From positions 59,547 to 123,546 of the forward strand of contig CATNEN010000036.1 in the NCBI GenBank assembly GCA_950097015.1: a stretch of 64,000 bases of DNA, written 5' to 3'. Within the stretch, counting starts at the first letter, position 1. Each line of letters opens with the position of its first letter. The stretch comes from Macrostomum hystrix (Eukaryota; Animalia; Platyhelminthes). The notes beneath the pieces were generated by a model that searched no databases, was not told the origin of the DNA, and was given only the letters and a program-made list of their open reading frames with translations. The position numbers and the translations under genes were made by a program. This document shows, piece after piece, positions 1 through 62,600 of this stretch.

Positions 1-900
1 CTTTAACTGTAAAAGTCTAAAAAGTTCTTGCATTGGACAACGAATCATTGACCTCCCAAGTTTAACTAAATAGGGCAGGACTACATTTTAAACTTTCCTT
101 TCAAGGAGAGCTAATCATTCACGTGACGAATGCACTGTGGAGAGGGAATAGAGGGGGTCGGGTAGAGGCACGGCAGGAGAGAGAGAAGATGTGGACGGAG
201 ATGGAGAGGGGGAGATGCCGGAAGCCACCACAAACCTCCCTCCCCTCTCTCAGCTTACCTTCGGCCAGCTTAGACATCAACAATGGCACCGGTAGGTAGG
301 CAGGGGAGCAAAGAAGAGTTAGCACTTTTAATAAAAAGGTTGGAGAGTGTCGGAGAAGGATGGAGCTGAACGATAGGGCAGGAAGCTGGGAGATAACTTG
401 ATGTAGCAGTGGAACATTGCTCCGTACCAACACGCGCAGCTTATGGCTCCGGCGATTGGGGATAAATCTCCCCATCATACACTATACTCAGATCCCAAAT
501 CCAAATACCAATCAATACATGCGCGCACAAAGTATTCTTTGCATTATGCATACAGTTCACTTTCTATCCCTATATTTTGCTCCCATCTGGTCAAATGCTG
601 AACTCACATTTCTCCCCAACTCGCATTAAAAGTGCAGCTAAGACAGTAAGGACAAAATTATTCCTAAAAAATGTGAATACTCAATAGCGGCAATTAAATT
701 TTTATTAGTATAAAAACTGTAGCTACTTATTTCACTTTACTTCTAACACTTTCACCCAGCAATCCAATTAGACAGCGGAATAAATTCACAAAAGTACTCA
801 CAAATTCTGTCAATGACATGCACCATAGTCCTGCCAGAGCCCACACCAATGGTTTGACAGTTCTGAAATATTATATAATTAATCAGTAATAAAAAGTAAT

Positions 901-13819: not shown

Positions 13820-16775
13820 TCACCATTGGATCAGCTGATGAGGCTAACAAAGAGCACACTGCAAGGCTTGGACTATGATTTGAAGCACAGCGGTGAGTGT
13901 CAATAGATGCGCTAGAGGAATTTGAGTCTCAAATCTCTTGTGTCTCAAATCTCTTCTGTCTCATCTCTCCTCTGTCTCAACTCTCTTCTGTTTCAAATCT
14001 CCCCTATCTCAAATCTCACGTGTCTCATCTCTCCCGTGTCTCATCTCTCCCGTGTCTCATCTCTCCACTGTATAATCTCTCCCCTGTATAATCTCTCCCT
14101 GTATAATCTCTCCCCTGTATAATCTCTCCCCTGTATAATCTCTCCCCTGTATAATCTCTCCCCTGTATAATCTCTCCCTGTATAATCCCTCCTCTGTCTC
14201 AAATCTCCCCTATCTCAAATCTCACGTGTCTCATCTCTCCCGTGTCTCATCTCTCCACTGTATAATCTCTCCCCTGTATAATCTCTCCCCTGTATAATCT
14301 CTCCCCTGTATAATCTCTCCCTGTATAATCTCTCCTCTGTCTCAAATCTCCCCTGTATAATCTCTCCTCTGTCTCAAATCTCAAATGAGATCTCTCTCCA
14401 TGATTCAGCAATCTCATTAGATTACTGCAGCGCTAAGATTGCGAAATGGCGTTGAAAAGTGAATTATTCGGGCCACATCATCTTGACACTGGGCCATTAA
14501 ACTCGCTCGCCTGTTTACGTTGTGGAATTCGCAGCTGCAGTTTAGTTGACTTTTCAAATTGCAGCGCAGAAAAAATAATATATATGCAAAGCACATCCAG
14601 CGCCTGGGATCTGATCCTCATGCAGTTAATCCCAGTCGGTGAGTGACAGCGTCTGTCAATTGCGACCCTGGGATCGTGCCGCTTTCAAGTGTCTTGCCCT
14701 GCAATGATCCAAGCAGTTCACCAGTGTGCATGGGTCACTAAACAGGTTCTTAGTGTTGGTAAAGAATCTCAACCCACTTTACTTCTTTAGCCTGCGTATA
14801 TGCTTGCGGGTTTAGCAGCTCTATAAGGATTGGAGAGATCGTTGGCACTTCAAATTTGTTCGTCCCTAGTTTGTTATCCGCTTGGCCAGGGTTTTTTATT
14901 ATTTTTTTGTTCGAACTGGGATTGGGGACATTGCGTGGATGGCAATTTCAAATGTCAAGGGTAATCAAGCTTGACATTGAAATCGTTGGGGAGGCTTGGG
15001 GAGAAGTTTTAGAAGGGGCCCATCACCGGACCGCATTTCGATAAATATTTTCGTAAGACTTGTTATCGAATGCTTATCAACACTCGGGTGGCCTGCGTTG
15101 GTATAGTCATGTAGAAGAGAGCTATCGATAAACACACCCCCGCGATCACCAGACACCATCCTTCAAGCAGCACAGAGGATGCTTGGACTGAGGCTTCCCA
15201 TCCTGTCATGCGGATATGTGGGAACTATACATCGCTAGTGCTGTCCACTTTGCCTTCAATGACACTTTTAATCTCGCATGACAATATTCCGATGTAAGAT
15301 TAGGCGCTGCGTCAACAATATGCGGAGAATCGCGCAAGTGACAAATTCATTTGCAGATAAGGGGGCTCCCTCGATGTGAAACTGCCCCGCTAGCAGTGAG
15401 AGCAAGCGATGTCGGCCTAAATGGGAAAGTTTAGATAACGGTCTCAGTGAAATATTGGGTCCTCCGGGTGCGCCTAGAAAACTTAGCCCAGTTTGTATTT
15501 GAATATTGCATTTTCAATCGCTGACAGAGGTCATTTGTCTTACTTTGATGCCGGCCAAACATAAGTGGAGACGCATGGGATCATGCTTGTGTCCAGCTTC
15601 CCAGCATCAAACAGATTCCTCACCGATTGGCACGGATTAGCGGCCTGTTATTTATGACTGCAGGCCCAAGTCGCGTACCGAATGTGTCCTAGGATATTGA
15701 GAATCCACTTAATCAGTCATGTCATGCATCCGGCCTCTCTTTCAACAGATCGGCTGACAAAACCTAACTGTTATGCCAGTGTGTTTAGACAACCGAAAAC
15801 AATATAGACTGCATTATCTGTGTCCATGATGATTCTGGCTTCAAGTTTTCACCGACGAGAGTCTTTATATTTACTTTTAGCTGCTGGGTGGCCGGCATTG
15901 CATCAACATTGAAATGAATTCGGGGATTTGGGGATTGGATGAAAGCGATGATACTATTCTGTGTTTGTGTAGGCGCGGTTGCATCTGTTTTAGAGTTTTC
16001 AGCGCGTATACAGTATACTGCGATGTATCGGCTTTTGTTAACAGTTGTCGGGACAGTAACTGATGACAATGATGGCTTACCGGGCGCTATTTTTGCGAAC
16101 AAAGGGAATATTATTATAAAAACAAACTTAGAATATTCGTAGGAAAAAACTCTAATCGATCAGCCTCTATAAAGCATTGCTCACAACCCAACAGATGCGG
16201 AAGGCTCGCTCGTGACACTCTGGTCTGAAAAGAACGGCTTCAGGCGGCGTCGCAAGACCCGGACGGCCTTTACAAGCAAGCAGCTCAGCGTGCTGGAAGA
16301 GCGCTTCCATGAGCAGAAGTACCTGACTCCGAATATGCGCGACGAGATTGCACAGTCTCTGGGACTAACCAACGCCCAGGTGATCACCTGGTTCCAGAAT
16401 CGTCGGGCAAAGATGAAGCGCGAAAACGAGGAGCTGAAGAACGACATGATGGCGACGCGAACGACGACTGGAACCATTGACGACGACGAGACTGCAGTCG
16501 ATGACGACGATGTTGATGACATCGGAGCCGAGCAGGACGTTGAAGATCTAGACGAGCCGATCAATCTGTCCGTTGATCTGGGACTCCGTCATCGGGCCAG
16601 CGGAAAGCGATCGACTGCAGACCGACATGACCAGCCGTCGACTTCTTCATGTTCGTCATCTGGTGGCGATTCTTCCAACATCGAAGACGAAGACGCGGAG
16701 GAGGCTGTGGCGGACACTCCGAAGCTGCTTAGCGCCAGCCACATCAAGAAGCGCAAACTGCTGTCCACAGCCTGA
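13571..16775 (+). CDS. LBX: Ladybird/Lbx-class (NKL) homeobox transcription factor, 2 exons, about 300 aa
   Basis: join(13571..13892,16195..16775), phase-1 GT-AG intron (G|gtgagt ... acag|AT) restores the frame. Homeodomain RRKTRTAFTSKQLSVLEERFHEQKYLTPNMRDEIAQSLGLTNAQVITWFQNRRAKMKR carries the Lbx-typical LTNAQVITWFQNRRAK. N-terminal eh1-like FLIRDLL; SPLDQLMRLTKSTLQGL resembles the Lbx SPLxALEELASKTFKGL motif. Confidence 0.9.
13925..14390. repeat. Pyrimidine-rich 16-17-bp minisatellite at the 5' end of the lbx intron
   Basis: Units TCTCATCTCTCCCGTG and TATAATCTCTCCCCTG; begins about 30 nt after the donor site. Confidence 0.9.
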
Positions 16776-23962: not shown

Positions 23963-25783
23963 TCTCTTTAAATGGCGGCCAGTTAAGTGTTTCCCATAGC
24001 AACGGAATAATAGTTGAACTTACTTTCTCTTCATTTTTTGTCAATTCCTCTCGGATGTGTTATTATTCGTGTAACTATTTATTTTTGCATGCGCTTAAAA
24101 TCTATACCGTATTTGCTTGTTGAATACGTCAGTTTTTTAGCCACAAGCCAAATTTTGGTAAGAAGTTATTCTGCTGTCTCAAAGTAAGTTTATTTTGTTT
24201 AACTGCTTCTTCTTAAAAAATCGAAGAAAAACTGATAGGAGTGAATTTTTCTTACTAAGCTTCATAGCGACGCAAATATATGAATATATTCTTTAATTTC
24301 TCACATACAAACTAATGAAAATGTACGTAGTTAAAGAAGACATGTTGAATGTTGAGTTTTATTCTTTTCCTGACGCTTTTCCTTAAAAAGAAGTCCCAAT
24401 GAAAGAGAAAAAAAATCGGAGAAAATTATAGAAATATTAGTAATGTGTAAAGATTTGATGACATGAAAGAAATATTTTTTAACTGCTTTAATTGACACTT
24501 GACACTAAATTCAGTAGAGTGCTTCCGCTCAGCTGCAAACATGCACTGGGAGGAAAATGGGGTGGGTTTGGCGGCCTTCCCAGTCCACCGACTGAACGGC
24601 TGTGCAAAATCGTTGGGAAGCTACGAAGCTATATATGCCACTTGGTGGTACATCTACTGTATATGGTCCAATTGGGCAAAGTTTATCGGCCATGAATTCG
24701 TGCATCACCTTCATTGTTCGTGAAGAGTTTTGCGTGTTGATCAGACACACGAAACTCCCACTTCTAGACAATGGGCAATGGGGAACAATTGCCTAGGAAT
24801 TTATAACAGTCACGTGACACTTACTGCAATTGCTTCTTGTTCCTTGAGTAGTTTGTAGTCTTCTGGTCTTCGAAAGCCGGCGGTTCTTATTCTCCTAGTA
24901 CTGATCGACCGTGAAGTATCGATTCTGTTGCTTCTTGAGTCTTTGTAGTCTTGTCTTCTTTGTCTTCTTGGCAGCTGCTTGAGTTTGTCTGTTGGCCAAT
25001 AAATGACGAGAGCGAATCAGACTACTTGTCGGTTTCCTCGAGCTCGGAATTCACAATAGAAACGTGCGCCCTAGTGAACAATTGAAATCTCTCTTGTAAA
25101 GATTCTCTAATAGGTCATCCTGAAGGGCGTCTTCTTCGTTACCTCCGAAAGATAACGGATAACTCAAATCAAATCAATCAATAATCCTCTAGGAATGTAT
25201 CCTAGGAAACAAGGAGGCCTTTCTCAAATGTATCGACTATATGTGGCTCTCGTAAACTCAGTTCAATTCAACAACGATTGCTAGCAATAAATAACTGTCT
25301 AGTAAAGCGCTTACCACTTGTCTTTCCCTCAGAGATGAGTCCTCTTCTTCGTAAGGTGTTTTGAAGTCCGGTGGACCGCTTCGAGTCTGAATTTTCAGCT
25401 CAGATTTTCGCTTGAATTTATAGTAAAATTTTGGGGAAAAACCGGTTCTACTACCGGGTGTTTACTTAGGCCACACATATTTGTTTAGTGAGTCATGATT
25501 GTGAGTTTTACCATATTTGGAATATTGTGTAAATACAGATACAGAAACCGATGAGTCATAATTGTTTGTCTTACCATATTTGGAATTCAAGCAAATCCAG
25601 CTGTCGAGAACCAGTTCTCCGGTTTCATGTCACATGACTTGTTTCTAAAAATAGCGCATGACTCATTCCTAAAAATAGATTAAACGTTATGGCTGAGGTT
25701 TCCTTGTGGCATTACTTTAAGTAGCGCGTTAAGTAAAAGCATATTTTACAACTCTCTACATTCGGGTTGTAGCCTATAGAGAA

Positions 25784-44675: not shown

Positions 44676-45176
44676 AATAGGGTAACGGAAGAGAACCTCA
44701 GTTAAAACTGAAGCTCAGAGGGTGGAATCGCTCAAGAATCGCGGATTTCAAAGACTCCGGCTTCTCTCTTAGGAACATAATGTGCGTCACTGGACAACAT
44801 AGTTAATCAACGGTCCGACGCTACTTATCGCGGAAGCGTGAAAACGCTTTTAGGGAGGCGTCGACGTCTATCGGCCAGGCACTGTTCAGGCAAGTCAGCG
44901 GCGAGAGTTTGTGCTAAACGCGTTCAGCAACATTTAGTCACGCTAAAAGAGTTGCAATCCAGCAGCGATGGTGAATCAATTCAGCCTGCTTTGTCAACCT
45001 AGCCTACAACATGCAATGTCACAAGAAAATCAATTGGCGTGAGTGGCTGCGTTAGCTCTATCTTTGCAGATTGCTATTTCGACAATTTCACCTTCAATTT
45101 CTCGAAATGATTGCTTGTATTATCCTGTAACACTTGCAAGTGATCGGACTGAATATTGAAAATGAAATGCTAACAT

Positions 45177-50703: not shown

Positions 50704-51904
50704 CTAGAGCTCATAACCACTGGGTTGCTGCGAAATTTGGTTGGACGAAGTGCGCGCAATTGGCTTGTTTGCAATCAGTTGGAACTGATTGCGCAGCTTC
50801 GTATAAAGTTCCCTGATTAGCTCTATGGCTAGGTTGACATGGTTCTCCTCATCGCTCCCATTTTGATAGCGAATATCCGCTAGAACGCGGTTGATGCCAG
50901 CTTGAGACCCTCCAGAATCCGAGCTTGCTCTCGCGCACCTTGGGATGCGGATCGGCGCCTTCAAGATCTTGACTCGATGCGCAATCGCTTTGTTCGTTTT
51001 GTGGCGGAGGGGCTTGCTGTAAATAGATGTCCCAGGGCAGGTTGTTCACAATCATGCTCAGCAGATTGTAGAACACTGACTCGATGTCGTGAATCGGATT
51101 CGGATATGTACCCTGAGCTCGGTACTGCGAAATAAATCGTGGGTTACCACCCAAATTAACTTCCGCCATCTTTTTATAAACCAGTGGTGTCTATTATCAT
51201 AGCTTTGCTGAAATTGGCTAGATATACCACATTGAATGCGGTTGAACGACCGAAATATATATTCTTGGGATCCACCGCATTGTGAACGACGCCGAATCTG
51301 TGAATCTGATAGCAGCGACAGACCCAACTGATCAAATATCTTAAACGCGGTCTCAAAGTCAAAGGTGCGAGCTTGGCGGTTGGAATGCATCATCACTTCT
51401 AACAGATAGTGGACGCTTGGTCCCCAGTCTTTCCATGCTCATATAGGCCATTGTTGATCTGGTCTCGGACTTCCATGGTATGAGGTAGCCAAATGGATCG
51501 ATGATTTTTTGCAGATGCGCGTTCGGACGGTTCGTAGTTATAAACTGAATTGGGCACTTCGTTGAATTCGAACACCATCGGGATCCCAGTCATTTCGTCC
51601 AGATCAAGGTTTTCCTGTAGATAGGCCTCCCAAATGTGCTTCAAAATGCTGTACTCACGAAAAAAGGAGGCCGAGAACCTTGTTACGCTTTCACTTGTAT
51701 TTTCAAGAACCTCCACCTTAATAATGAACTGACAGTGCAACGTCCCAGGGCCGACGCTTTGACAAATGTGGATTAGGCTTGTCAATTGTGCGTGTATAGG
51801 CAGTGATTTTCTTTTCATAAAGCGGAATGAGCGACGAATTTGTATGTGTCGAAGTTAGCTACTTGCTCAATCGAGCATCTGGTGAGAGCGTCGATGACTA
51901 TCAT
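50704..51904 (-). pseudogene. Casein kinase 1/TTBK-like kinase-fold pseudogene with multiple frameshifts
   Basis: Successive frames give FIIKVE (VAIK), REYSILKHI, TGIPMV, MERLG, FETAFKIFDQL, VVHNAVDPKNIYFG (HRD loop), VYLANFSKA (DFG), GNPRFIS and HDIESVFYNL; at least 4 frame changes are needed. Confidence 0.75.
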
Positions 51905-53380
51905 GGCGCTTGCTGGATTGGGTGCACACGTGCAAGTCATCTGATCCCGTGAATAGAAAAATCTGAGAAAAATCTTTCGAAGTGGCTAGAATGGCAAAGA
52001 ACAATCGATGCCCGCTTCTGAAGATGATTCATCTCTTTCTGCGCCTCGAGCGATTGTCAGCTTCATGCATTCCAATGTCTTCTACGATTAACGAAAATGT
52101 TGGTTGCGTCATTTTGCAAGCCGTAGGTAGCACGATCGGGACGTATTAGATAGGTGATGGCTGACACATAAATTAGATCTCTCTTTGCAACCCTATTGCT
52201 TAATCTCCCCTAAATGGGATGTCTATGGCCATGGTGTGCGAAATGACTAGTTGCGCTTGTGCGAACGAAGTTTGCGACCTAAAACAACTCGCGTAGGATT
52301 TACAAGCCTAGGAAATCACTATTTTGCCATTGCTTTGTTGTTTTTGTATTTCATATGATAAGCTTTAGGCATAGAAGTGGACAAAAAGTCTGATGTTTCC
52401 ACGACTGAAACTTTTGCAAGTAGTTTATACATTTTTGCGGTACATGACATATTAAATCTTGACTTACGAACTATGGGTTTCTTGTTGCGAAATTAAGCGA
52501 AGCTCAATTAAAATGCAGGAATGCATACAATATTAAAAGTGCTTAATGCTCTTACAAATGTATTCATCATAACACAGGCGATAAGGTGACTGAGTCAACT
52601 GAGAACACACTATGTCATTTCTTATGTTTTTCTTTCTAGAAATTTAACACCGTGAAAACTTCTAATACTATAACAAATATAGTAACAGATTTCAGTTTAC
52701 TACATTAAAATATATAGCTCTTTCATAATTATTTTGTAATAATATGTATCGAATCAGATCTAGTCATTTGCTATTACAAATTTGGTAGCGACTATATGTA
52801 ACTCTAAAGAGAAGTCGTGACTCGAAATTTGTGACTAAATATAATTCAATTTGCGAATTCAGTCGCGGTAAACAATATTTATTTTTTATATTAATGGTTG
52901 TAGATGCAGTATATAAATAAGCCTAGTCGTACCCTTTGGAGCGCAGTTATTGTAAAAAAGAGGAGAGCTATTTGAATATTTGGAATTATTATAATAAATG
53001 ATTTATTAATTTCGCTAGTTAACCATTTCATCATAACTAATAGAATGTATAGATAGGCACTATATATTAATCAAAGATGAACAACGTTAAATGAATCAGC
53101 TGTTCTACCAAGCAAGAATACTATATATAATGCTTATTATTCTCAATTTTGTTTCCTACTCAGGCTGAAAACTATATTATATAATTTGTAGTTACAAATA
53201 CCAAACAAGGCAAGATTATTCTTGTCTGTCATTTGCTTACGAAATTTTGTTTTTCATGCTTCCAAGTAGGGTTACAATGAATAAATGTAATAATCTGATA
53301 TGTTTTAAACTTGCAATTTACTTTATTTTCATTTTCCCAAAAAAGCATGCCTGTTACTAGTTTGCAGCATAAAGTGCGTG

Positions 53381-53900
53381 ATGCTTGCCGAACGACCGAA
53401 TTTCGCCTGGCAGCCTACTGCTCACAGCAGAGTTCTATCACACCATCAGCCATCTATTCATCTTGTGCAGGTTTCGACTCCTGCCCCGTCGCGATCTGGT
53501 TCGAGTGCGTGTGTACTTTTTAGCTGACACCTTCACGGTCTTTCTAGCCTGGCTGTACATCGGGCGGCTGTATTGGTGGCTAGGATCTGTACACGGCTGC
53601 TCAGGTGGCTCAGCAATCTGTACATATTACTTAACCTGGGAAGACAGCGTCTTTGCTAGGCGCGTGTTCTCCTGGAGCTCTCTGGACTGGCCAGAAATTC
53701 GGTGAACTTCGCTGGTTTGAAATCGTCGGCACATCATATTCGACATCGCCGTCCACCTGGTGACGCCTTCCTGCTGGTTGCACCTGCTCACCTCCGTTGA
53801 GGTCATCCTGTGCCTGGCTCTCACCCAGTGCATGGTGCTGCTGGTGCATGTTCAAACCCCATGCTAGCCTGGGCTTCCCCAGCCTACATCCCAGACTGGG
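53381..53900 (+). pseudogene. Uncharacterised multi-pass membrane protein gene with several frameshifts
   Basis: GC-rich coding-like island in AT-rich DNA. Hydrophobic segments AEFYHTISHLFILCRFRLLPRRDLVRVRVYFLADTFTVFLAWLY, VFSWSSLDW, FEIVGT-FDIAVHLV and VEVILCLALTQCMVLLV lie in alternating frames. Confidence 0.5.
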
Positions 53901-55222
53901 TGAGGAGGCGCCTGGCTCCGATCCCTAGTCACTCGAATGCCAACTGACTGGTGGACTCAGGAAAGGCTAATAGACAATTCTTAAAACTGTATAGCGTCTT
54001 ACACTTCTGATATCAATTAAGCAGAGCTAGATTTGCTTGCAAAGTTATAGTTATCTCATTCCATTTACTGAAATCCAGAAATATATTGTATTTCGCTACT
54101 TTAAGACTAGAAAATGTACAGCATTTTTTGTTAGAACCAAACGTTTTAGTAATAAAGTAGTGAGCCTCTGTCTGATATTTAATCAAGCGTTCTGAATGCG
54201 AAAGATAGACATAGTAGACCAGTCCGCACCTCAGAGGCTTGGCCTGAATTCTCAAGTCGAGTTTTTTGCTCAGAGTTGAGCACAGAGCACTGAAACGGTG
54301 CACTTGAGTTCACAATGAACGGCCTCGCCCCTTCTACGGTTCACACTCTCTAATCGAGCTCGAACTGTCTGCCGCACTGGCCCTGCTCTGTGCCTCTCAA
54401 TGTCCAATGCCTGGTCTGGCCCAGCCAACTCAGAGTTGACATATCTCAGGTCTTCTCATGCCTGGCACCGCCTAGAATTCACCTTTTCTCTACTTGAGTT
54501 CATGCTCACAAAAATCTGCATATGTTAGCATCTTCTGCTGCTGTGCTTCTCAACCATGCCCTGTTTATTATAATACTGTTTCGTAGCTTCGAGGCTAGAA
54601 ATGACCGACCATTAGTCAGAGAGAACACTAAAACCAGAGAGAACAGAAAGAAAAATTCGTTTAAAGCAAAATCCGCTCGCATGTTTGAATTTTTGCACGG
54701 CTTCTCTCCGGCTCAACTTATATTTCAAGTTTCTTGTTGAAGCGAAGCAATATTTTGGTTCCACGGTGAAATTTTTAGCTAACCGAAATATAAACAATGT
54801 AAACGAAGTTTTTAAGGACATGCTTGCTAAATGCGCAAATCAGTAGCTAAAACTGGCTGACACATAAGCTTCAGCTAACGTGTTGAGAATTTATTCGCAA
54901 TAAAAAAAAATCTACCTAAATTTAAGTACTCGTAGTAGTGCATTTGTTGGAAATCCAGTGAGCCTCTGGACTCTGGTCCAGAAAATAAGGTTGTTGGCAG
55001 GAGTTTTCGCTCCGGTTTCTATAGAGGGCCTTGTTATTAATCTTAAAGAAATCTGAAAGCAAATAAGAACATATAAGTGTAGTTGGATTCTCAGAACTCA
55101 GAACAGGGCATGCGCTTTAAGTTTTGATTGATTTTCAGTAGTATCGAGTGTATTTTATTCGTTTTTTGTATTGAAGATTCTAACAGCTTTTATTTTAATT
55201 TGGAACCATGCTCGCCTTGGTC

Positions 55223-57271
55223 TCAGCGATCTGTAGTTGCGCCGCCTGGTGCGCCCACTCTGGTGCTTCGAGTGTCTCGGCGCATAACAACGCGTCGCTG
55301 CTCTTGCTGCTCTTGGTCAGCTTGCTTCTGCTGGGCTAGCTGCATCTGCTGCATCAGCTGCTGCTTGAATTCCTCGCTACTCGGATTTGGCTCGGCTCCA
55401 GCGCAACGCTGACAGGATTTGTCGCTGCTTTGCATCGGCGCCTGTGGCGGCGAAGCTGAGTGCGACTCTGTGGTCTCGCTGACATTCTTGTCACCGTTTC
55501 GACAGAAGGAACAACTGCTGAGCAGCGAGGTGAAGCGGACCGCCAAGCCGGCCGCTAAGCGCTGAAGGTGCGCCCTCTGTGCAGGATTCAAGAAGGCGTA
55601 GACGCAGGGATTCAAAGCCGCGGAGCTGTAGCCAAACAGGCGCAGATATTCTCGCAGAGGATCGCTAGCGGTTGATACCAGGTTGGCTACGGAGAAGGGC
55701 GCCCAGCAGGCGAAGAACACAGCTGTGGTGAGGCCCACCGTCAGGCTGAGGCGGATATTGCGGCTGCGACTACTAGACATCGCGCTTCTGCTGCTTTCGA
55801 TTTTCTTGCCCCCCTGTCCGACTGCGTTCGCTTTACCGCCTGGAACTTTTTCCACTCCGATAGCTGACTCGCGTCTCCCAAGGTGTAGCAGCAAAGTTGT
55901 GTAGCAGAACTGCACCAGCGCTATTGGCAGCCACACATAGGCTGTCTGGACGTACACTCTGAATGCCAGCTCCCTGTTGATAATAGAAAACAGTGCGAAT
56001 CGAGCGAGTTCTCGAAAATTGGTGCAGAGCTTAGTAGCCTGTGGCCTCCTGGCTAAAAACTCGGAATTTTACCTTGACGCTCTGTCGCTAGTGTTGGACC
56101 AAACATTGCCGCACTGATAAGTTATTGCGTATGTGCCAATTCCGATCAGAGATTTCATGAAATTTTCGAAATTGTGTGTCAGAGACTACCAGCTGTGGTA
56201 GAGCCATCACCAGTGCCAGCGCCACGCTGCCGAAGATGTTGACAAGCATCAGACCGGCTGGGTGACGGGCTGCTGCGCTCAAAGGAAACACTGCCACATA
56301 CAATCTGTAAAATTAGGTTATGGTGGCTTAGTCCAGGGACAGCAGCAGATGACTGCAGCTGTTACCGATATAACTGTGAGGCAATAATTTCCCATGTCTA
56401 TTGGAGTTAATAATACTAGTAATAATAAAATTTTGCAGGAGGGTTGTGGGCACTTGAATAACATTTGGTGTTTTTCAAAGAAGGCCATTCTGCCTATTTC
56501 GCTCAGTCCTGAGCACAGATGCACACAGATACGGCAAGCAGGAACACTCTCACACAGGTGTGTACATCTGCCCTGACGTTCTCATCTTCAGGCAGTGTAA
56601 ATCCTAATTGTGGCCATTAAGTGTGAAAATTGCACGACGAGCCCTCAAGCCTTCTCTCCACGGTTGTGCCCCAAATGAATGTGGCCTCGCCGCGGAATTG
56701 AGCTCAGCGACCTTGGTGCGAGAGGCAAACAGGTCAGAACGCTTTGCCCTCACCCTTCTCACCTACCTAGAGTTAAAATTTGCATTAATATCAATATCAA
56801 ATTAGCAAGTAAGTCAGCCTACCTCTCGAAGCCCAATCCGACTAGGAAAAGTACATGAGATCCGTAAACAACGGCGGGAATGTAATGAAACGCTTTGCAG
56901 CTGGCAGATGCATAGTTGAATTCCACGTGAAAACTGTCACCAATGGCCACAAAATCAGTAGCCCACTGGTCGTAATAAAGATAATTGACCAGCTGCATTG
57001 GCAGATTGACCAGGATGAACGCCAGGTCGAACCCGGCAACGCCATAGTGGACATAGGCACCGCCACTGACGCCGCTACCGCCTCCCGCAACAGAACGGCG
57101 CCTCAGCTTAGCATGCGAATATGCTGCTAGTAGCATGAGAACGTTGGCAATCACCCCTAGCAGCCCAATGCTGCTGTACAGGCCTATGAGCAGGTACTGA
57201 GTTTTTGTACCGTCTTGCATGCTTTCGAGGGTGGAAGCAACTTGCACTGTCACTTCTGAAATAATAGGCAT
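55223..57271 (-). CDS. Class A (rhodopsin-like, probably peptide) GPCR, 3 exons, one apparent +1 frameshift
   Basis: complement(join(55223..55973,56073..56304,56823..57271)). TM1 GLLGVIAN, TM2 D, C at TM3, ERL (DRY), TM6 FFACWAPF, TM7 NPCVY. The exon total of 1432 nt is 1 nt out of frame; the shift lies in exon 2 (ECL2). Confidence 0.8.
56445..56745 (-). mobile_element. SINE family A, copy 5 (GPCR intron 1)
   Basis: Reverse complement matches the head and central hairpin. Confidence 0.82.
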
Positions 57272-58452
57272 GGTCAGCCTAGCGATGAGTCCTCTGTAGT
57301 AGATATTTAGCGACCGGGCAATGACTTGCTCAGTTAAAACCTGTCCCGTCAAGCGTTGAGCTCAGCTTTTCCGGTTGCTCAGCCAAGGACAAAAATAGAT
57401 GGAATCTTTCGATCAGAATTCAGTTTCCTAGAGCCCTTTGAGTTTGTGGTTCGTGCGTTACGAAGCGGTTAACTTTGGTTGCTGAGACGAGTTACGGTTT
57501 TATAATGGCTGCTTCAGGTCAGGAAATTCAATAAGCCCTGATAAGCGATGCTCAAATTTAATCTCAGTGAGGATAGTCAGGACAATTTTACGACGCGAAC
57601 AGATTTGCCACCGGTTCAGCTGGGAATCGTGCCGGATCAAAGATGTTTCTCAGCTAGCCAAACAGCCTGCTCTTATCCGTTTTTTGCATTGCTCTTGCAG
57701 CTTGCTAATTTGCTGATTCAGATTCGAGTGCAAGCAATAAAGTTGACCCGTTGCAATTTCATCGAGTCAAAGTAAATAAAACCTTTGACACTTAATAACT
57801 CCAGCATATACGACAACATATTTAGCATTTCAAAAAGAACAGCTGTAAACCTTGGTATAGTCGGTTTTCTGTTTAAAAATAGCAAAGCTCAAAAATACGA
57901 AAAGCAAAAGACATGCTCTGTCAAGGTGCAAATGTCAGGACTTGTTGAATATATCTGTATTATTTTCGTAACTGCTATGATTCAACTTGGATTTTTTGTA
58001 CCTAATTACTTTTTAATTGACTACTTGTAGTGTCATTCTGCCATTAAATTAGACTTTTCTACTGATTGTATGCACAAAGTCGCTCGCAAATGTGATATTG
58101 TATAGCTGGTATTCAAAATATCCTAATACAAACATTGTGATTTATAAAAAAATATTAAAAACGTGCAAAGCATAAGAAAATAGCAGAGATAAAAATTCCA
58201 ACCTTTTTCAGCTATTGAGTTCAACCTTTAAGGCTTCGATAAGCAGTCTAGCATTGTTTAATCAGCAGTTACCTTTTACTTACTGATTCGAACAATACAA
58301 GTATGAATACTTATTACTGGCCTATGAGCAAGAGCAAAAAATCGACTACTTTAAATAAGTATTTATACGATCGTACTTTAAAATACACGTAGTTCACCAA
58401 ATCAAACACACGAGATACGTATCAGACGGTATCTAGGGAAAGCTGGTACAAA

Positions 58453-61400
58453 TTACGCTTGGTTATAATCAAAAGGCAGTCTTCCCTGAAATCGCGGATT
58501 TATGAACGAACTGGTGTTGGGCTCCCGTATCTGGACGTAGTCGGGCTGCTCCTGCGGAGTGATCTGTTCCTGAACCGGCACGCTCTCGATGTTGTACTCC
58601 AGACACTGCTCCTCGATGTCGTCCATCTTGGCTCCGTTGCCGTTGATCTCGGAGGCGGCTAGAGAGACTGGACCAACATGACTGCCTATCTGGGACGCCG
58701 CGTAGATGTCGTACGGGTTGGACCGATACACCAGGCTGCGCATGTCCCTGCAGTACGAGGTCAGAAAATTGGGTTTCATCATCATTTACAATTACGAACC
58801 GTATTTCAGACTTTTCAAAGTGATCTTACCTAGGCCGCTTGACAAGGCAATACACGATTACAATGATGCACATCAGGATGATGAACGCGGCAATGGCAAT
58901 CAGGGCAGCCCAGACATCGGTTGAGAAGCCGTACTGATAGAGAATTTCCGACGTCTTCCTGAAGGCCAACTGGCCAGTGGTGACGCTGAATGGCGGTCGG
59001 ATGGTCTCCAGAGGAACCACTCCGCTCAAGAGGTTTCTAATCGCCGCCTTGGCCTCTGTGGTCATGAAAGCGCTGAAATACGAGTTTGATGGGTTTGATG
59101 AGTGCAAAATCAACTGGATGATATGGTCCCAGCCAGAATTAACTGGACCAAGTTATTAGTTACTGGCAAATTCCTCTCAGTCTTTTCTGCAGTTTTAGAC
59201 GTAGATTAAAATCTCTGTTACGAATACCTTAACAATCCAACTCCCTGGTAAGATTTTCCTAATTAGACAAATGAATTAGATGTAGAAGCAGTATACGTAT
59301 GCCTTACTTGGTGGGTTCAGCATCCTCTCGGACACAGATGTCGTAAGTTACCGGGTTGACGCAGACGAACCAAATATCGGTGCTGAAGTTTAAGAATTGG
59401 AAAGGAAAGTATATCAATTTTCCTGGCTGCTTCATGATAATCAAGGCGCGACCGCACTTTGATCGTTCGCGACCAATGTAAAGCTTCCCAGGCTAAAGGT
59501 AAAAAGGCACGAACCCTGTGATATCGTCCATAACGGTGCTTCCATCGAGATACTGGCGGGGATTCACGCGCTCAATGATGACCACCTGACCGGTTGCGTT
59601 TTGCAGCGTCCTACAATAAGTAACGACAAATACTTTTATTTGCTGGAGCTTGAGAACATTTGAGCAGGAGCCTGGAGTTAAGCGTCTCTAATAGTTCTTC
59701 AAAGCCTCTGGAAAAGTTAAATAAAAAAATAAATTTTCTAACCTTCGAATAGTCTCGATGCTTGGAATGGTAACCTGCGGCTGCTTGTTGGGTCCGGGTA
59801 TGACCAGGATCATGCGGTTCTTATCCTGGATCAGGTTCACAATCACCTCCGTGCTGGAGGAGAGCCGCACAGGCAGGCCATTGTCCTGAGCTATGACACC
59901 AAAGCGGTACTTGATCGTTGAGTCCCGGGTGAAGCTGGCGGCCGTGCGGACCGACCCGTCCATGGCGGACAGCAGGAAGGGCGGGTTCGGCGGTGTTGCT
60001 GTGGTCCACATGTTGGGCGCGTACGAGACTTCCGCATTTCTGCCCAGGTCCGCGTCGGTCGCCTGGTTTTTAATCAGTTTTAGAAACCGTTTTATTAACT
60101 AGGATAATCAACTAGCATGTGTTTGCATCTCGCACCAAGGTCGCTGAGCTCGATTCCGCGGCGAGGCATATTTATTTGGTGTGCAGCCCCAGAGAGAAGG
60201 CTTCGGGCTTGTCGTGCAATTTACGCACCTAAGGGCTAACCTCCAAGGCACAGTGAAATATTATTCTGCCTGACAATGAGAACGTCAGATGTATACACCT
60301 GTGTGAGGGTGTTCCTTCTTACAATATCTGTGTGCGAGTGAGCTCAGGAGTCAGCGGAATGGGCGCAGTTGCCTCTCGCTGGCAGCGGGTCTGATGTCAC
60401 CAAATGTTGTACTAGTGCCCACAGCCCTCCTGCACATGATGCTATTATATTATTACCAAGACAATCATCAGTTGACTCACGTTTATATTAATAGCCAGTG
60501 TGTTGGCTGCGGCAAACATATCCACCGCGGCAAAGTACTTATCCTGCGTACTGGTCCGGTTGGGGTATACTGGGTAGTGGAACACTGGCGCATTGTCGTT
60601 AGTATCGGACACCAGGATCAGCACCTTCACAGTCGGATAGGATGTGTACGCTGCGAGAAGGGATTTTAGTGGATGGTAGGTAAATATATTGCCAAGGAAG
60701 CATTTACTGATTTACTCATGTGTGCAATGATATATTTAATCTGCATCAACACAGATTAGCATGTTGGTTTCAACAAATATCATAGGAGTTTATGAGTTCA
60801 TTAGATTTTGAATTGGGCTAGTGAATCATCAGGAAGTGCAAATATACTATTACTGAGTCCATGGTTACAGGAGATACTGGCTCCCGTTGTGTGTACAAAG
60901 ATTAGTCAGTTAATGGATGCAGTACGTGTCGATAAAAAGTACAAATTCAATTATAACAGTGACAAAACGTACACACGTTCTTAGTCGGTTATTGATATCT
61001 TAGCAGTTTGATATGATATTAAGTTCTTGTCGAATTTCATTGAATCCACATTTAATGAGAATGTAATACAGAATTGTCAATGGCCAGTTTCATTGACAGC
61101 AATTATTTCAAAGGGATTAATTTTTATTCCAAAATGAGTCAACATATTCACTCAGTCAGAGTACTCAGCAGTTCGCTTACCTGAGCCTAGCAGGAGGTGT
61201 AAATGGGAGGCTTGTTAATTAGCCATTGCAAAATAGGACTTAATATAGATTCGATGTACAGAATCATAAATAAATAATTAGGTAAGAAAGTGAAATTTAA
61301 GACTCAACTTCGTGCACAAAATTACTTTTTTCGCGATTAAGCTTACCGGATGCTGCAGCAAGGAAAATGGAGAGGGGTGGGTCATATTAATGGAGCTCTG

Positions 61401-61947
61401 AGCAGCACTGATGCGAGATGATTATTTAAATCAACAAAAACTGTTTTGAAACACGCAACTTTCGCACAAAAGCGCAAGCAAACTCGGTACGTATCGGCAT
61501 TTTCGTATGCGAACTGATTATTGTAAGAGAAGCATGCAGATTTGCCTGGTTAGGCTACATAAGTTTCGCGCTTCAGACCGCAATGGGTGCTCTAATGCTT
61601 GAAGTGACAAATGAGACAATGCAATTTGGTGTCGAGCTTACTCTGCCGTTTGCTGCGCGATAGAAGTGGCTCCATGGCATCGCTTGTATCTCTGCGTTTT
61701 CTCCCTGTCACTGAGATAGAATGAGTGACAGAGATTCTCAGGTCGAATCTGCCAATCGCCTCTCTATCCACCACCTTCTTGGTCACCATCTGACAGTCTT
61801 TGTTGCCATTGTAGCCAACTATGTCAAAATAGCCAGCCTCGTTACCGCTGGCGAAGTTGCAGCCGACTGTTTTGTCCGTGTCCTGATAGATGACATCCAG
61901 GATGAGCACACTGGTACCGATCACGGCATTTTCGGGGAGCTCAACGA
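58453..61947 (-). CDS. Cadherin-superfamily protein, 3' part (last EC repeats, membrane-adjacent domain, TM, short tail)
   Basis: complement(join(58453..58747,58830..59072,59308..59382,59515..59610,59743..60062,60481..60650,61181..61186,61347..61352,61642..61947)), all phases consistent. Motifs ELPENA, VDRE, DTNDNAPVF, ATDADLGRNAEVSY, AQDNG; TM VWAALIAIAAFIILMCIIVIVYCLV. The architecture resembles CDH23/PCDH15/Cad87A-type non-classical cadherins. Confidence 0.88.
60115..60450 (+). mobile_element. SINE family A, copy 6 (cadherin intron)
   Basis: CTCGCACCAAGGTCGCTGAGCTCGATTCCGCGGCGAGG...CTGCCTGACAATGAGAACGTCAG...CACAGCCCTCCTGCA. Confidence 0.85.
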
Positions 61948-62600
61948 CTGCTTTAGTTCCTCGGCAGCCAACTCGTCTCTTAGCCTCTGACGGTATGCCG
62001 CATGTGCACTGGCACACATGTTCCGCAGCACCGGAGTGACGGGCAAAGTCGCAGCAGTCCACTCGGGCACGATCGACTGATGGTAAGAGCTTTGACCGTG
62101 AACGGCGCTAAGCTCTGCCGCTTCTTCGTGATGGTGTCTCTCAGCTGACTGAACACCCGCTCAACTTCCGCGGTTCCCATGGGGCAAAACAAGTAGTGCT
62201 CGTACTAATCTCATCAGCAGAGGACGATTTCCAGCGTTTAAAATGGACTCCCAGAAGCTGACGACGTCGTCGGTCGGGGTAGAGGTAGACACATCCTGGT
62301 GAAGACGCACCTCCACCTCCACGCTGCCGATATAAACTATTCAGTACCAATAAATTCAGACATGCACATGTGAATATGAAGGTAAAAAAGTTAGGGAGGT
62401 ACAGAACATCATGAAATTTAATTTTAAATGGGTGCCTGGAGTTAAAAGCTTCTTAAGGAAAAAATAGCGCAAAAATGGGGGAATATTTTTCACATTTTCG
62501 CGCCATTAGCCATTCGCATTTTTCGCGCCATGGTCACAGAATTCGCATATTCGCGCCATTTCCGCGCAGGCGCGAATTCGCGCCACCGCCACGACCACTG
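61948..62600 (-). mobile_element. Internally deleted, 3'-truncated hAT element
   Basis: Terminus CAGTGGTCGTGGCGGTGGCGCGAA at 62600; four subterminal TTCGCGCCA repeats (62497, 62522, 62550, 62577). Frameshifted transposase C-terminus SFWESILNAGNRPLLMRLVRALLVLPHG/TAEVERVFSQLRDTITKKRQSL (hAT dimerisation motif). Confidence 0.8.

What the first reader, a model, noticed from the sequence alone, without database searches (positions are those of the whole stretch)
61181..61352. Two consecutive 6-nt micro-exons in a cadherin repeat
On the minus strand, cccctctccattttccttgctgcag|CATCCG|gtaagc (61352-61347) and cctcccatttacacctcctgctag|GCTCAG|gtaagc (61186-61181) each have a strong pyrimidine tract and consensus donor; the second also has a branch-point-like CTAATTAAC. 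Both are symmetric phase 1, between exons ending CAG-A and starting CG-TAC. Inclusion gives RSKRQ-TSGSA-YTSYP, and skipping either or both keeps the frame (up to 4 isoforms). They modify the residues right after a furin-type site. Micro-exon splicing is established in schistosome MEGs and neural microexon programmes; this instance is invisible to ORF tracks.
Basis: partly seen in the sequence, partly recalled or inferred. Interest (0 to 1): 0.75.

Follow-up and report, generated by a model that had tools for sequence, protein, structure and literature searches.

The report
Two candidate 6-base exons in cadherin
One intron of a giant flatworm cadherin gene holds two 6-base stretches with unusually strong splice signals on both sides; they are most likely tiny optional exons that add two or four small residues next to a conserved protease-cut motif, but no RNA evidence could be obtained here.

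Summary
On the minus strand, a 991-nt phase-1 intron (61641-60651) of a multi-repeat cadherin gene contains CATCCG (61352-61347) and GCTCAG (61186-61181). Each follows a pyrimidine-rich tract plus AG and is followed by GTAAGC.

In 627 kb of this genome (both strands), only 5 of 258 AG-N(3..30)-GTAAG sites have a tract this strong. Two of the five are these, 166 nt apart, on the sense strand and frame-preserving. Chance for one such intron is about 1e-5.

The genome matches the published Macrostomum hystrix assembly (220 Mb, 42 contigs). The intron position, directly after an R-x-K-R-Q motif, is shared by three distant relatives. Those relatives have short introns with no micro-exon candidates. 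The annotated nemertean orthologue has the skipped form.

No RNA-derived sequence was reachable, so inclusion and alternative use remain inferred.

Verdict: probable real micro-exons (about 0.65), a new instance of a known kind, of moderate interest. The scan has already flagged micro-exons in other genes of this genome (a LAR phosphatase and a peptide precursor), but not this one.

The window's copy sits on a short leftover contig truncated by a hAT fragment. The intact gene is on contig C37.

The parts
61642..61945 (-). Upstream coding exon: most of one cadherin repeat, then a loop with two dibasic motifs (G-R-K-R-R and R-S-K-R-Q). It ends in phase 1. On contig C37 it starts one base earlier, behind a proper TTCTAG acceptor.
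   Evidence: Pfam PF00028 E 9.8e-8, profile positions 3-76 of 93. Aligns to residues 2611-2722 of the Tubulanus protein P0007 at 40% identity. C37 acceptor seen.
61353..61641 (-). Intron part A (289 nt): donor GTAAGC. Contains the branch-point-like TTAAT about 36 nt before the AG, and the C/T-rich tract plus TGCAG acceptor of micro-exon 1.
   Evidence: tract 0.85; no other AG in the last ~42 nt.
61347..61352 (-). Candidate micro-exon 1, CATCCG. With the split codons it gives T-S-(G/A).
   Evidence: Identical on C37:44945-44950.
61187..61346 (-). Intron part B (160 nt): donor GTAAGC. Contains the branch-point-like CTAAT/TTAAC, and the C/T-rich tract plus TGCTAG acceptor of micro-exon 2.
   Evidence: tract 0.80.
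61181..61186 (-). Candidate micro-exon 2, GCTCAG. Its donor context CAG|GTAAGC matches 8 of 9 positions of the U1-complementary consensus.
   Evidence: Identical on C37:44778-44783.
60651..61180 (-). Intron part C (530 nt), ending in the acceptor CTCGCAG of the downstream exon.
   Evidence: No Rfam family above threshold in the intron.
60470..60650 (-). Downstream coding exon: last strand of the same cadherin repeat, with the D-x-N-D-N-x-P linker and the start of the next repeat. Donor GTGAGT.
   Evidence: Translation. Aligns to P0007 residues 2724-2774.
58453..60011 (-). Rest of the gene's 3' part at ORF level only: last cadherin-like repeat, a transmembrane segment followed by K-R-P-R, and a short cytoplasmic tail.
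   Evidence: ORF list; weak PF00028 match for 59688-60011. Exon borders were not refined.

Best explanation
The two hexamers are real internal micro-exons of a giant multi-repeat protocadherin; its nemertean orthologue is named 'protocadherin Fat 4-like'. Each has a complete private set of splice signals: a branch-point-like motif, a long C/T-rich tract, AG, 6 nt, then a strong donor. The 991-nt intron can therefore be removed as three introns of 289, 160 and 530 nt. Both units are symmetric in phase 1, so each can be included or skipped without changing the frame. This inserts two or four small polar residues (T-S-G-S-A in place of T) into the loop before the last strand of a membrane-proximal cadherin repeat, three residues after a conserved R-x-K-R motif. 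Shown here: the signals, their rarity, the frame, the protein context and the conserved intron position. Inferred: use in mRNA, optional versus constitutive use, cleavage at the motif, any effect on cleavage or adhesion, and which splicing factor acts. The TGC/TGCT just before each AG would suit SRRM-type or MBNL-type regulators.
For: Signals and coordinates are. Rarity: only 5 of 258 comparable sites in 627 kb have a tract of 0.8 or more, and two are these. The background rate is at most 4.8e-6 per nt, so two in a 991-nt stretch has a probability of about 1e-5; one of the three others lies in a retroelement. Among 26 inferred ordinary acceptors of the same gene, only one reaches 0.8, and most clearly called introns are 76-125 nt, so this intron is unusually long and would be split into more ordinary sizes. 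These are the only GTRAG sites in the intron, and both are paired with an acceptor. The intron region is single-copy apart from the C36/C37 pair. The two cores with their signals are identical between the two copies, although the intron carries 4 differences elsewhere. The loop tolerates length change: relatives carry six more small polar residues at exactly this point. Micro-exons are documented in flatworms, with 262 alternative ones in a planarian (PMC4978528). A strong 5' splice site, a long branch-point-to-AG distance and a UGC near the AG are the described micro-exon architecture (bioRxiv 10.1101/2024.09.17.613571).
Against: There is no RNA evidence of any kind. Neither flanking exon finds an RNA-derived protein, and the whole-library search gives nothing closer than 47% identity. 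The only annotated orthologue (Tubulanus, P0007) has exactly one residue at the junction, which is the skipped form. Three relatives at 40-42% identity have 164-nt and 288-nt introns here with no candidates, so there is no conservation at that distance. TGCAG is common at ordinary acceptors of this gene (7 of 26), so the UGC argument is weak. No SRRM C-terminal (eMIC-type) domain was found in the six-frame search of the genome. The tract threshold was chosen after the fact, and the scan read many windows.
Confidence: 0.65

Rival explanations
1. Chance pseudo-exons: two accidental acceptor-donor pairs in a long intron that the spliceosome ignores.
For: No RNA support. Not present in the three relatives. 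The orthologue is annotated in the skipped form. Comparable single sites do occur by chance, for example inside a retroelement. The finding was selected from a genome-wide reading, so there is a look-elsewhere effect.
Against: The joint probability for one 991-nt stretch is about 1e-5 under relaxed criteria. It is far lower for two units of exactly 6 nt with the same GTAAGC donor. Both lie on the sense strand, both keep the frame, and both acceptors rank at the top of the gene's real acceptors.
Confidence: 0.22
2. The splice-site pairs are functional but serve splicing rather than the protein. They could help remove an unusually long intron stepwise in a genome of mostly short introns, or act as decoy sites that modulate intron retention.
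For: Most clear introns of this gene are 76-125 nt, whereas this one is 991 nt. The units divide it into 289, 160 and 530 nt.
Against: Stepwise removal through these sites would leave the 6-nt units in the mRNA, which is the main explanation. The exon-to-unit junction does not regenerate a donor, so the units cannot be spliced out afterwards (sequence). The published mean intron length for M. hystrix is 692 nt, so 991 nt is not extreme genome-wide (PMC10468722).
Confidence: 0.08
3. The strong internal acceptors are spliced-leader trans-splice acceptors for a shorter transcript that starts inside the gene.
For: SL trans-splicing affects 10-20% of M. hystrix genes, and some genes have several SL sites (PMC10468722).
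Against: This does not explain a consensus donor exactly 6 nt after each acceptor, nor the frame symmetry. A product starting there would lack a signal peptide.
Confidence: 0.03
4. Recursive splice sites (ratchet points).
For: An acceptor lies close to a donor inside an intron.
Against: Ratchet points juxtapose AG and GT with no exon between them and are known from very long introns. Here 6 nt intervene, the intron is under 1 kb, and no donor is regenerated at the junction.
Confidence: 0.02

Closest known systems
Animal micro-exons of 3-27 nt (the neural, SRRM3/4-dependent programme in vertebrates and flies; differentiated-cell micro-exons in the planarian Schmidtea)
   Same: Size, frame-preserving symmetry, location in a surface loop of a cell-surface protein, a strong donor, a long pyrimidine tract with a distant branch point, and UGC next to the AG.
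   Different: Inclusion, tissue specificity and regulator are unknown here. No eMIC-type domain was detected in the genome by a six-frame Pfam search. There is no conservation in the relatives that could be reached.
LAR-type receptor phosphatase mini-exons meA/meB; earlier notes of this scan report candidates in the same genome
   Same: Tiny optional inserts in extracellular loops or linkers of an adhesion receptor, able to give combinatorial isoforms.
   Different: A different gene family. There the inserts tune ligand choice between Ig domains, whereas here the insert sits after a dibasic motif inside a cadherin repeat. The LAR notes were not re-tested here.
Insect fasciclin I micro-exons (McAllister et al. 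1992, as cited in PMC8042270)
   Same: Alternatively spliced micro-exons (a 9-nt one is cited in PMC8042270) in one adhesion-molecule gene, creating multiple forms.
   Different: A different protein fold and phylum. The original paper is not held in the library, so the details rest on the citing paper and on my own knowledge.
Schistosome micro-exon genes (MEGs)
   Same: A flatworm lineage, with symmetric exons of 6-36 nt that can be skipped in frame.
   Different: MEGs are small secreted proteins built almost entirely of micro-exons. This is a cadherin with about 26 inferred introns and coding stretches of up to roughly 1.7 kb, with just two such units.
Proteolytically processed giant cadherins (Fat, Dachsous and Flamingo type; furin-type R-x-K/R-R sites)
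   Same: Many cadherin repeats, a single-pass membrane anchor, and a conserved R-x-K-R motif near the membrane-proximal repeats.
   Different: No EGF or laminin-G Pfam families are listed for the orthologue, so it is not a canonical Fat. Cleavage is inferred from the motif only.

Membership tests
Micro-exon (internal exon of 30 nt or less) | Own 3' splice site: branch-point-like motif, pyrimidine tract, AG | tested here: met
   Tracts of 0.85 and 0.80, against 0.7-1.0% of all AG sites reaching 0.8. TTAAT and CTAAT/TTAAC lie upstream.
Micro-exon (internal exon of 30 nt or less) | Own 5' splice site complementary to U1 | tested here: met
   CCG|GTAAGC (7 of 9 positions) and CAG|GTAAGC (8 of 9). 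They are the only GTRAG sites in the intron.
Micro-exon (internal exon of 30 nt or less) | Open frame maintained with the flanking exons | tested here: met
   Phase 1 on both sides, 6 nt each, and no stop in any combination.
Micro-exon (internal exon of 30 nt or less) | Presence in mature mRNA (exon-microexon-exon junctions) | not testable with these tools
Micro-exon (internal exon of 30 nt or less) | Conservation of the unit and its splice sites in related species | tested here: not met
   L017 and L019 (40-42% protein identity) share the phase-1 intron but have no candidate; in L018 the contig ends inside the intron. Congeners (M. cliftonense, M. lignano) could not be reached.
SRRM3/4 (eMIC)-dependent micro-exon programme | UGC between pyrimidine tract and AG | tested here: inconclusive
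   Present at both units (TGCAG, TGCTAG), but 7 of 26 ordinary acceptors of this gene also end in TGCAG.
SRRM3/4 (eMIC)-dependent micro-exon programme | Genome encodes an Srrm234-type factor with the C-terminal domain | tested here: inconclusive
   PF15230 gave no match at E<=1 in a six-frame search. The domain is short and may be split by introns.
SRRM3/4 (eMIC)-dependent micro-exon programme | Neural or differentiated-cell-specific inclusion | not testable with these tools
   No expression data available.
Schistosome-type micro-exon gene (MEG) | Most of the coding sequence is made of many symmetric micro-exons, and the product is small and secreted | tested here: not met
   The gene spans about 40 kb on C37, with coding stretches of up to roughly 1.7 kb and many cadherin repeats.
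Recursive splice site | Juxtaposed AG|GTAAGT with a zero-length exon, regenerating a donor after the first step | tested here: not met
   6 nt lie between AG and GT, and the junction ...CAGA|CATCCG has no GT.
Cadherin repeat (PF00028) | Profile match and D-x-N-D-N-x-P linker | tested here: met
   E 9.8e-8 for the upstream exon. D-T-N-D-N-A-P is in the downstream exon.
Furin-type proprotein convertase site | R-x-K/R-R motif in an exposed loop, conserved | tested here: met
   R-S-K-R-Q here; R-Q-K-R-Q in Tubulanus; R-N-K-R-Q and R-K-K-R-Q in the relatives. In the genomic loci it always lies at or one codon before the same phase-1 intron.
Furin-type proprotein convertase site | Actual cleavage of the protein | not testable with these tools
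   Needs protein work.

The most novel reading that the evidence does not exclude
The two cassettes form a two-step length adjuster: 0, 2 or 4 extra residues, with two different 2-residue versions. They sit between a conserved convertase cut and the last strand of a membrane-proximal cadherin repeat. Cell-type-specific splicing would then decide whether, or how fast, a giant protocadherin is cut into a non-covalent heterodimer. That would be micro-exon control of receptor processing rather than of ligand binding.
Probability: 0.12. Interest if true: 0.55.

Novelty: new member of a known kind. Interest (0 to 1): 0.35.

Why it matters
If the units are used, this gene adds a clean case of two adjacent 6-nt cassettes. 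Exons that short are routinely missed by annotation and by standard RNA-seq mapping. It is in a free-living flatworm that already has a good genome and RNA-seq data. The units sit right after a conserved dibasic motif, which gives a simple, testable link between micro-exon choice and proteolytic processing of an adhesion receptor. The result also shows that a plain signature (AG, 3-30 nt, GTAAG, and a tract at least 80% pyrimidine) has a low background in this genome, about 5 per Mb of single strand. That signature could be used to list candidates genome-wide. The general phenomenon is well known, so the gain is incremental.

Tried and rejected
- **Flanking-exon protein searches.** Each exon was searched separately in the 5.8-billion-protein set. 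Nothing was found for the upstream exon or the downstream exon.
- **Whole-library HMMER search with the upstream exon.** There were 22 hits, the best at 47% identity, and none from this species.
- **Search for more orthologues or isoforms, using the Tubulanus region 2590-2800.** Only generic Fat and Cdh23 relatives at 22-45% identity came back, with no second orthologue.
- **The look-up of encoding contigs**, to fetch the orthologous introns of P0007, P0002, P0003 and P0013.
- **Paralogue search in the own genome.** Only the C36/C37 pair was found.
- **Duplication origin of the two units.** Similarity is confined to a 37-nt core that includes the splice signals (p about 0.01). The flanks alone are not significant, so recent duplication is rejected as an explanation.
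- **Rfam scan of the intron.** Only sub-threshold noise.
- **PF15230 (SRRM C-terminus) in the genome.** No match.
- **A second batch of background DNA.** The background is therefore 627 kb rather than more.
- **P0007 against the own genome.** It was replaced by a local tblastn.
- **Joined (spliced) coding sequence.** Exons were handled one by one, by reference.
- **Human origin.** The contig is not human.

Full report
**What is there.**
- Read on the minus strand, window 61945-61642 is a coding exon. It matches the cadherin profile PF00028 at E 9.8e-8, over profile positions 3-76 of 93.
- After the repeat's second-to-last strand, the exon continues into a loop with two dibasic motifs, G-R-K-R-R and R-S-K-R-Q. 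It ends one base into a codon, at a GTAAGC donor.
- The next coding exon starts at 60650 with the other two bases of that codon. It supplies the last strand of the repeat and the D-T-N-D-N-A-P linker.
- Each hexamer is preceded by a C/T-rich tract (17 and 16 pyrimidines of 20) and an AG. Each is followed by GTAAGC, and each has branch-point-like motifs about 29-36 nt upstream.
Skipping both gives T at the junction, and the other combinations give T-S-A, S-S-A or T-S-G-S-A. None contains a stop.

**Is it more than chance?**
- In the 64-kb window, both strands, there are five AG-N6-GTAAG sites. Only these two have a tract of 0.8 or more.
- Fewer than 1% of all AG dinucleotides have such a tract.
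- I widened the test to 627 kb of the organism's own DNA, counting both strands. This comprised the window, 49 kb of the same gene on another contig, and twenty 10-kb samples of contig C1. I also allowed any length from 3 to 30 nt divisible by three.
- That gave 258 sites, of which five reach 0.8: these two and three others. One of the others lies inside a retroelement and none has a gene context.
- The background rate is therefore at most about 4.8e-6 per nucleotide. Two in one 991-nt stretch has a probability near 1e-5. It is far lower if one also asks for exactly 6 nt twice and the same donor hexamer.
- These two are also the only GTRAG sites in the whole intron.
- The threshold was set after seeing the data, and the scan has read many windows, so this is strong but not decisive.

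**Gene and genome context.**
- The assembly has 220,453,370 bases in 42 contigs. This matches the published Macrostomum hystrix assembly, about 220 Mb in 42 contigs (PMC10468722). Earlier notes of this scan also call the genome Macrostomum.
- The window is the last 64 kb of a 123,546-nt contig, C36.
- Window 51388-61945 is 99% identical to C37:35000-45543. There are 86 small differences, mostly 1-nt indels.
- Above 61945 the two contigs part. C37 has a normal acceptor and a long series of upstream cadherin exons reaching about C37:81,000. C36 continues into a hAT transposase fragment (PF05699, E 1.5e-5) and ends 2 kb later.
- The upstream exons exist only on C37. The window's copy is therefore a 5'-truncated copy. 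It is most simply a leftover haplotig or an allele with a transposon at the acceptor. The assembly paper reports separately assembled haplotypes that were purged.
- Both flanking exons and both micro-exon cores with their signals are identical on C37, at 44945-44950 and 44778-44783. The intron's four differences lie elsewhere.

**How the candidates compare with real splice sites here.**
- I threaded the Tubulanus orthologue through C37 and chose frame-consistent GT..AG pairs. This gave 26 inferred introns, some of them uncertain.
- The clear ones are mostly 76-125 nt and phase 0. Their donors are GTAAG or GTGAG, and their acceptor tracts are A/T-rich and score 0.45-0.75. Only one reaches 0.85.
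- The two candidate acceptors therefore sit at the top of the gene's own range, and they are unusually C-rich.
- The candidate donors match 7 and 8 of the 9 consensus positions, at least as good as the constitutive donor of the upstream exon.
- Using the units would turn one long intron into three of 289, 160 and 530 nt.
- This is the architecture described for micro-exons: strong donor, long branch-point-to-AG distance, and UGC close to the AG (10.1101/2024.09.17.613571).
- The UGC point is weak here, because 7 of the 26 ordinary acceptors also end in TGCAG.

**Relatives.**
- A whole-library HMMER search with the upstream exon found no protein of this species. The best long hit is a 3125-residue protein of the nemertean Tubulanus polymorphus, XP_074647699.1, named 'protocadherin Fat 4-like'.
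- It aligns at 40% identity through both dibasic motifs, up to ...R-Q-K-R-Q at residue 2722. The downstream exon aligns from residue 2724. Exactly one residue, S, sits at the junction, which is the skipped form.
- A scan of the JGI metagenome collection gave three genomic loci of unnamed animals at 40-42% identity.
- In L017 and L019 the exon ends one base after the R-x-K-R-Q codons, or one codon later, in phase 1. The introns are 164 and 288 nt and contain no candidate units. In L018 the contig ends inside the intron.
- Their downstream exon begins with six more small polar residues than ours, before the conserved strand. The loop at exactly this point therefore varies in length and is rich in S, T, G and A, which is what the two units would add.
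- The conserved features are thus the intron position and the dibasic motif, not the micro-exons.
- At 40% protein identity, the lack of conservation says little about the genus.

**RNA evidence.** None was found. Both flanking exons were searched separately, by reference, without any hit.

**Mechanism.**
- The most likely reading (0.65) is two genuine cassette micro-exons that lengthen the loop after the R-S-K-R motif by two or four residues.
- That the motif is a convertase site is inferred from its form and its conservation in five sequences. That insert length affects cutting is speculation.
- The regulator is open. TGC/TGCT next to each AG would suit SRRM-type factors or MBNL. In a planarian, 262 alternative micro-exons exist, and mbnl knock-down affects 20 of 54 micro-exons enriched in differentiated cells (PMC4978528).
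- A six-frame search for the SRRM C-terminal domain found nothing, which is a weak negative.

**Rivals.**
- Chance pseudo-exons (0.22).
- A splicing-only role (0.08).
- Spliced-leader acceptors (0.03). The species does trans-splice, but this leaves the donors unexplained.
- Recursive sites (0.02), not met on sequence.

**Comparison with known systems and novelty.**
- This works like the animal micro-exons known from vertebrates, flies and planarians. It also resembles the mini-exon cassettes of adhesion receptors such as LAR phosphatases and insect fasciclin I (cited in PMC8042270).
- It is not a schistosome-type micro-exon gene.
- A literature search for micro-exon, cadherin and furin together returned only two unrelated reviews.
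- It is a new member of a known kind. It is unverified at the RNA level and of moderate interest.

Noticed in passing
window 61946-62200 (minus strand), continuing to the contig end at 64000: A hAT transposase C-terminal fragment (PF05699, E 1.5e-5) abuts the cadherin exon and replaces its first base and its acceptor. Contig C37 has the intact acceptor and all upstream exons, so the window's copy of the gene is 5'-truncated. A 155-nt piece is 100% identical to C41:3610593-3610747 and 86% identical to a site on C11.
   Followed up: partly
window 51388-61945 versus G000:C37:35000-45543: The two contigs are 99% identical over 10.6 kb, with 86 differences. Most are single-base indels clustered at 51.4-54.2 kb and 56.0-56.1 kb. 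C36 is only 123,546 nt long. This looks like a residual haplotig or an unpolished duplicate in the assembly.
   Followed up: partly
window 55223-57352 (minus strand): A rhodopsin-family GPCR gene lies just downstream of the cadherin. The clear match is to 55223-55957 (PF00001, E 1.5e-8). A second ORF at 56819-57352 is only a sub-threshold match (E 0.067).
   Followed up: no
window 25333-25350 (plus strand) and 16081-16086 (minus strand): Two further micro-exon-like sites. One is an 18-nt unit with a 0.85 pyrimidine tract and a GTAAGG donor. The other is a 6-nt unit, CGCCCG, with a 0.6 tract and a GTAAGC donor. No gene context was established for either.
   Followed up: no
L017:10251-10330: In this relative, reading through the GTGAGT donor stays in frame for 26 codons. 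The first 13 loosely resemble the spacer between the two dibasic motifs of the M. hystrix and Tubulanus proteins, at 5 of 13 identical. This could be a shifted 5' splice site during evolution, or chance.
   Followed up: no
window 61375-61385 and 61200-61209 (minus strand): Both candidate units carry CCTC(T)CCATTT at nearly the same distance (about 17-27 nt) before their AG. This could be a shared cis-element or a trace of common origin. It is not significant on its own.
   Followed up: partly
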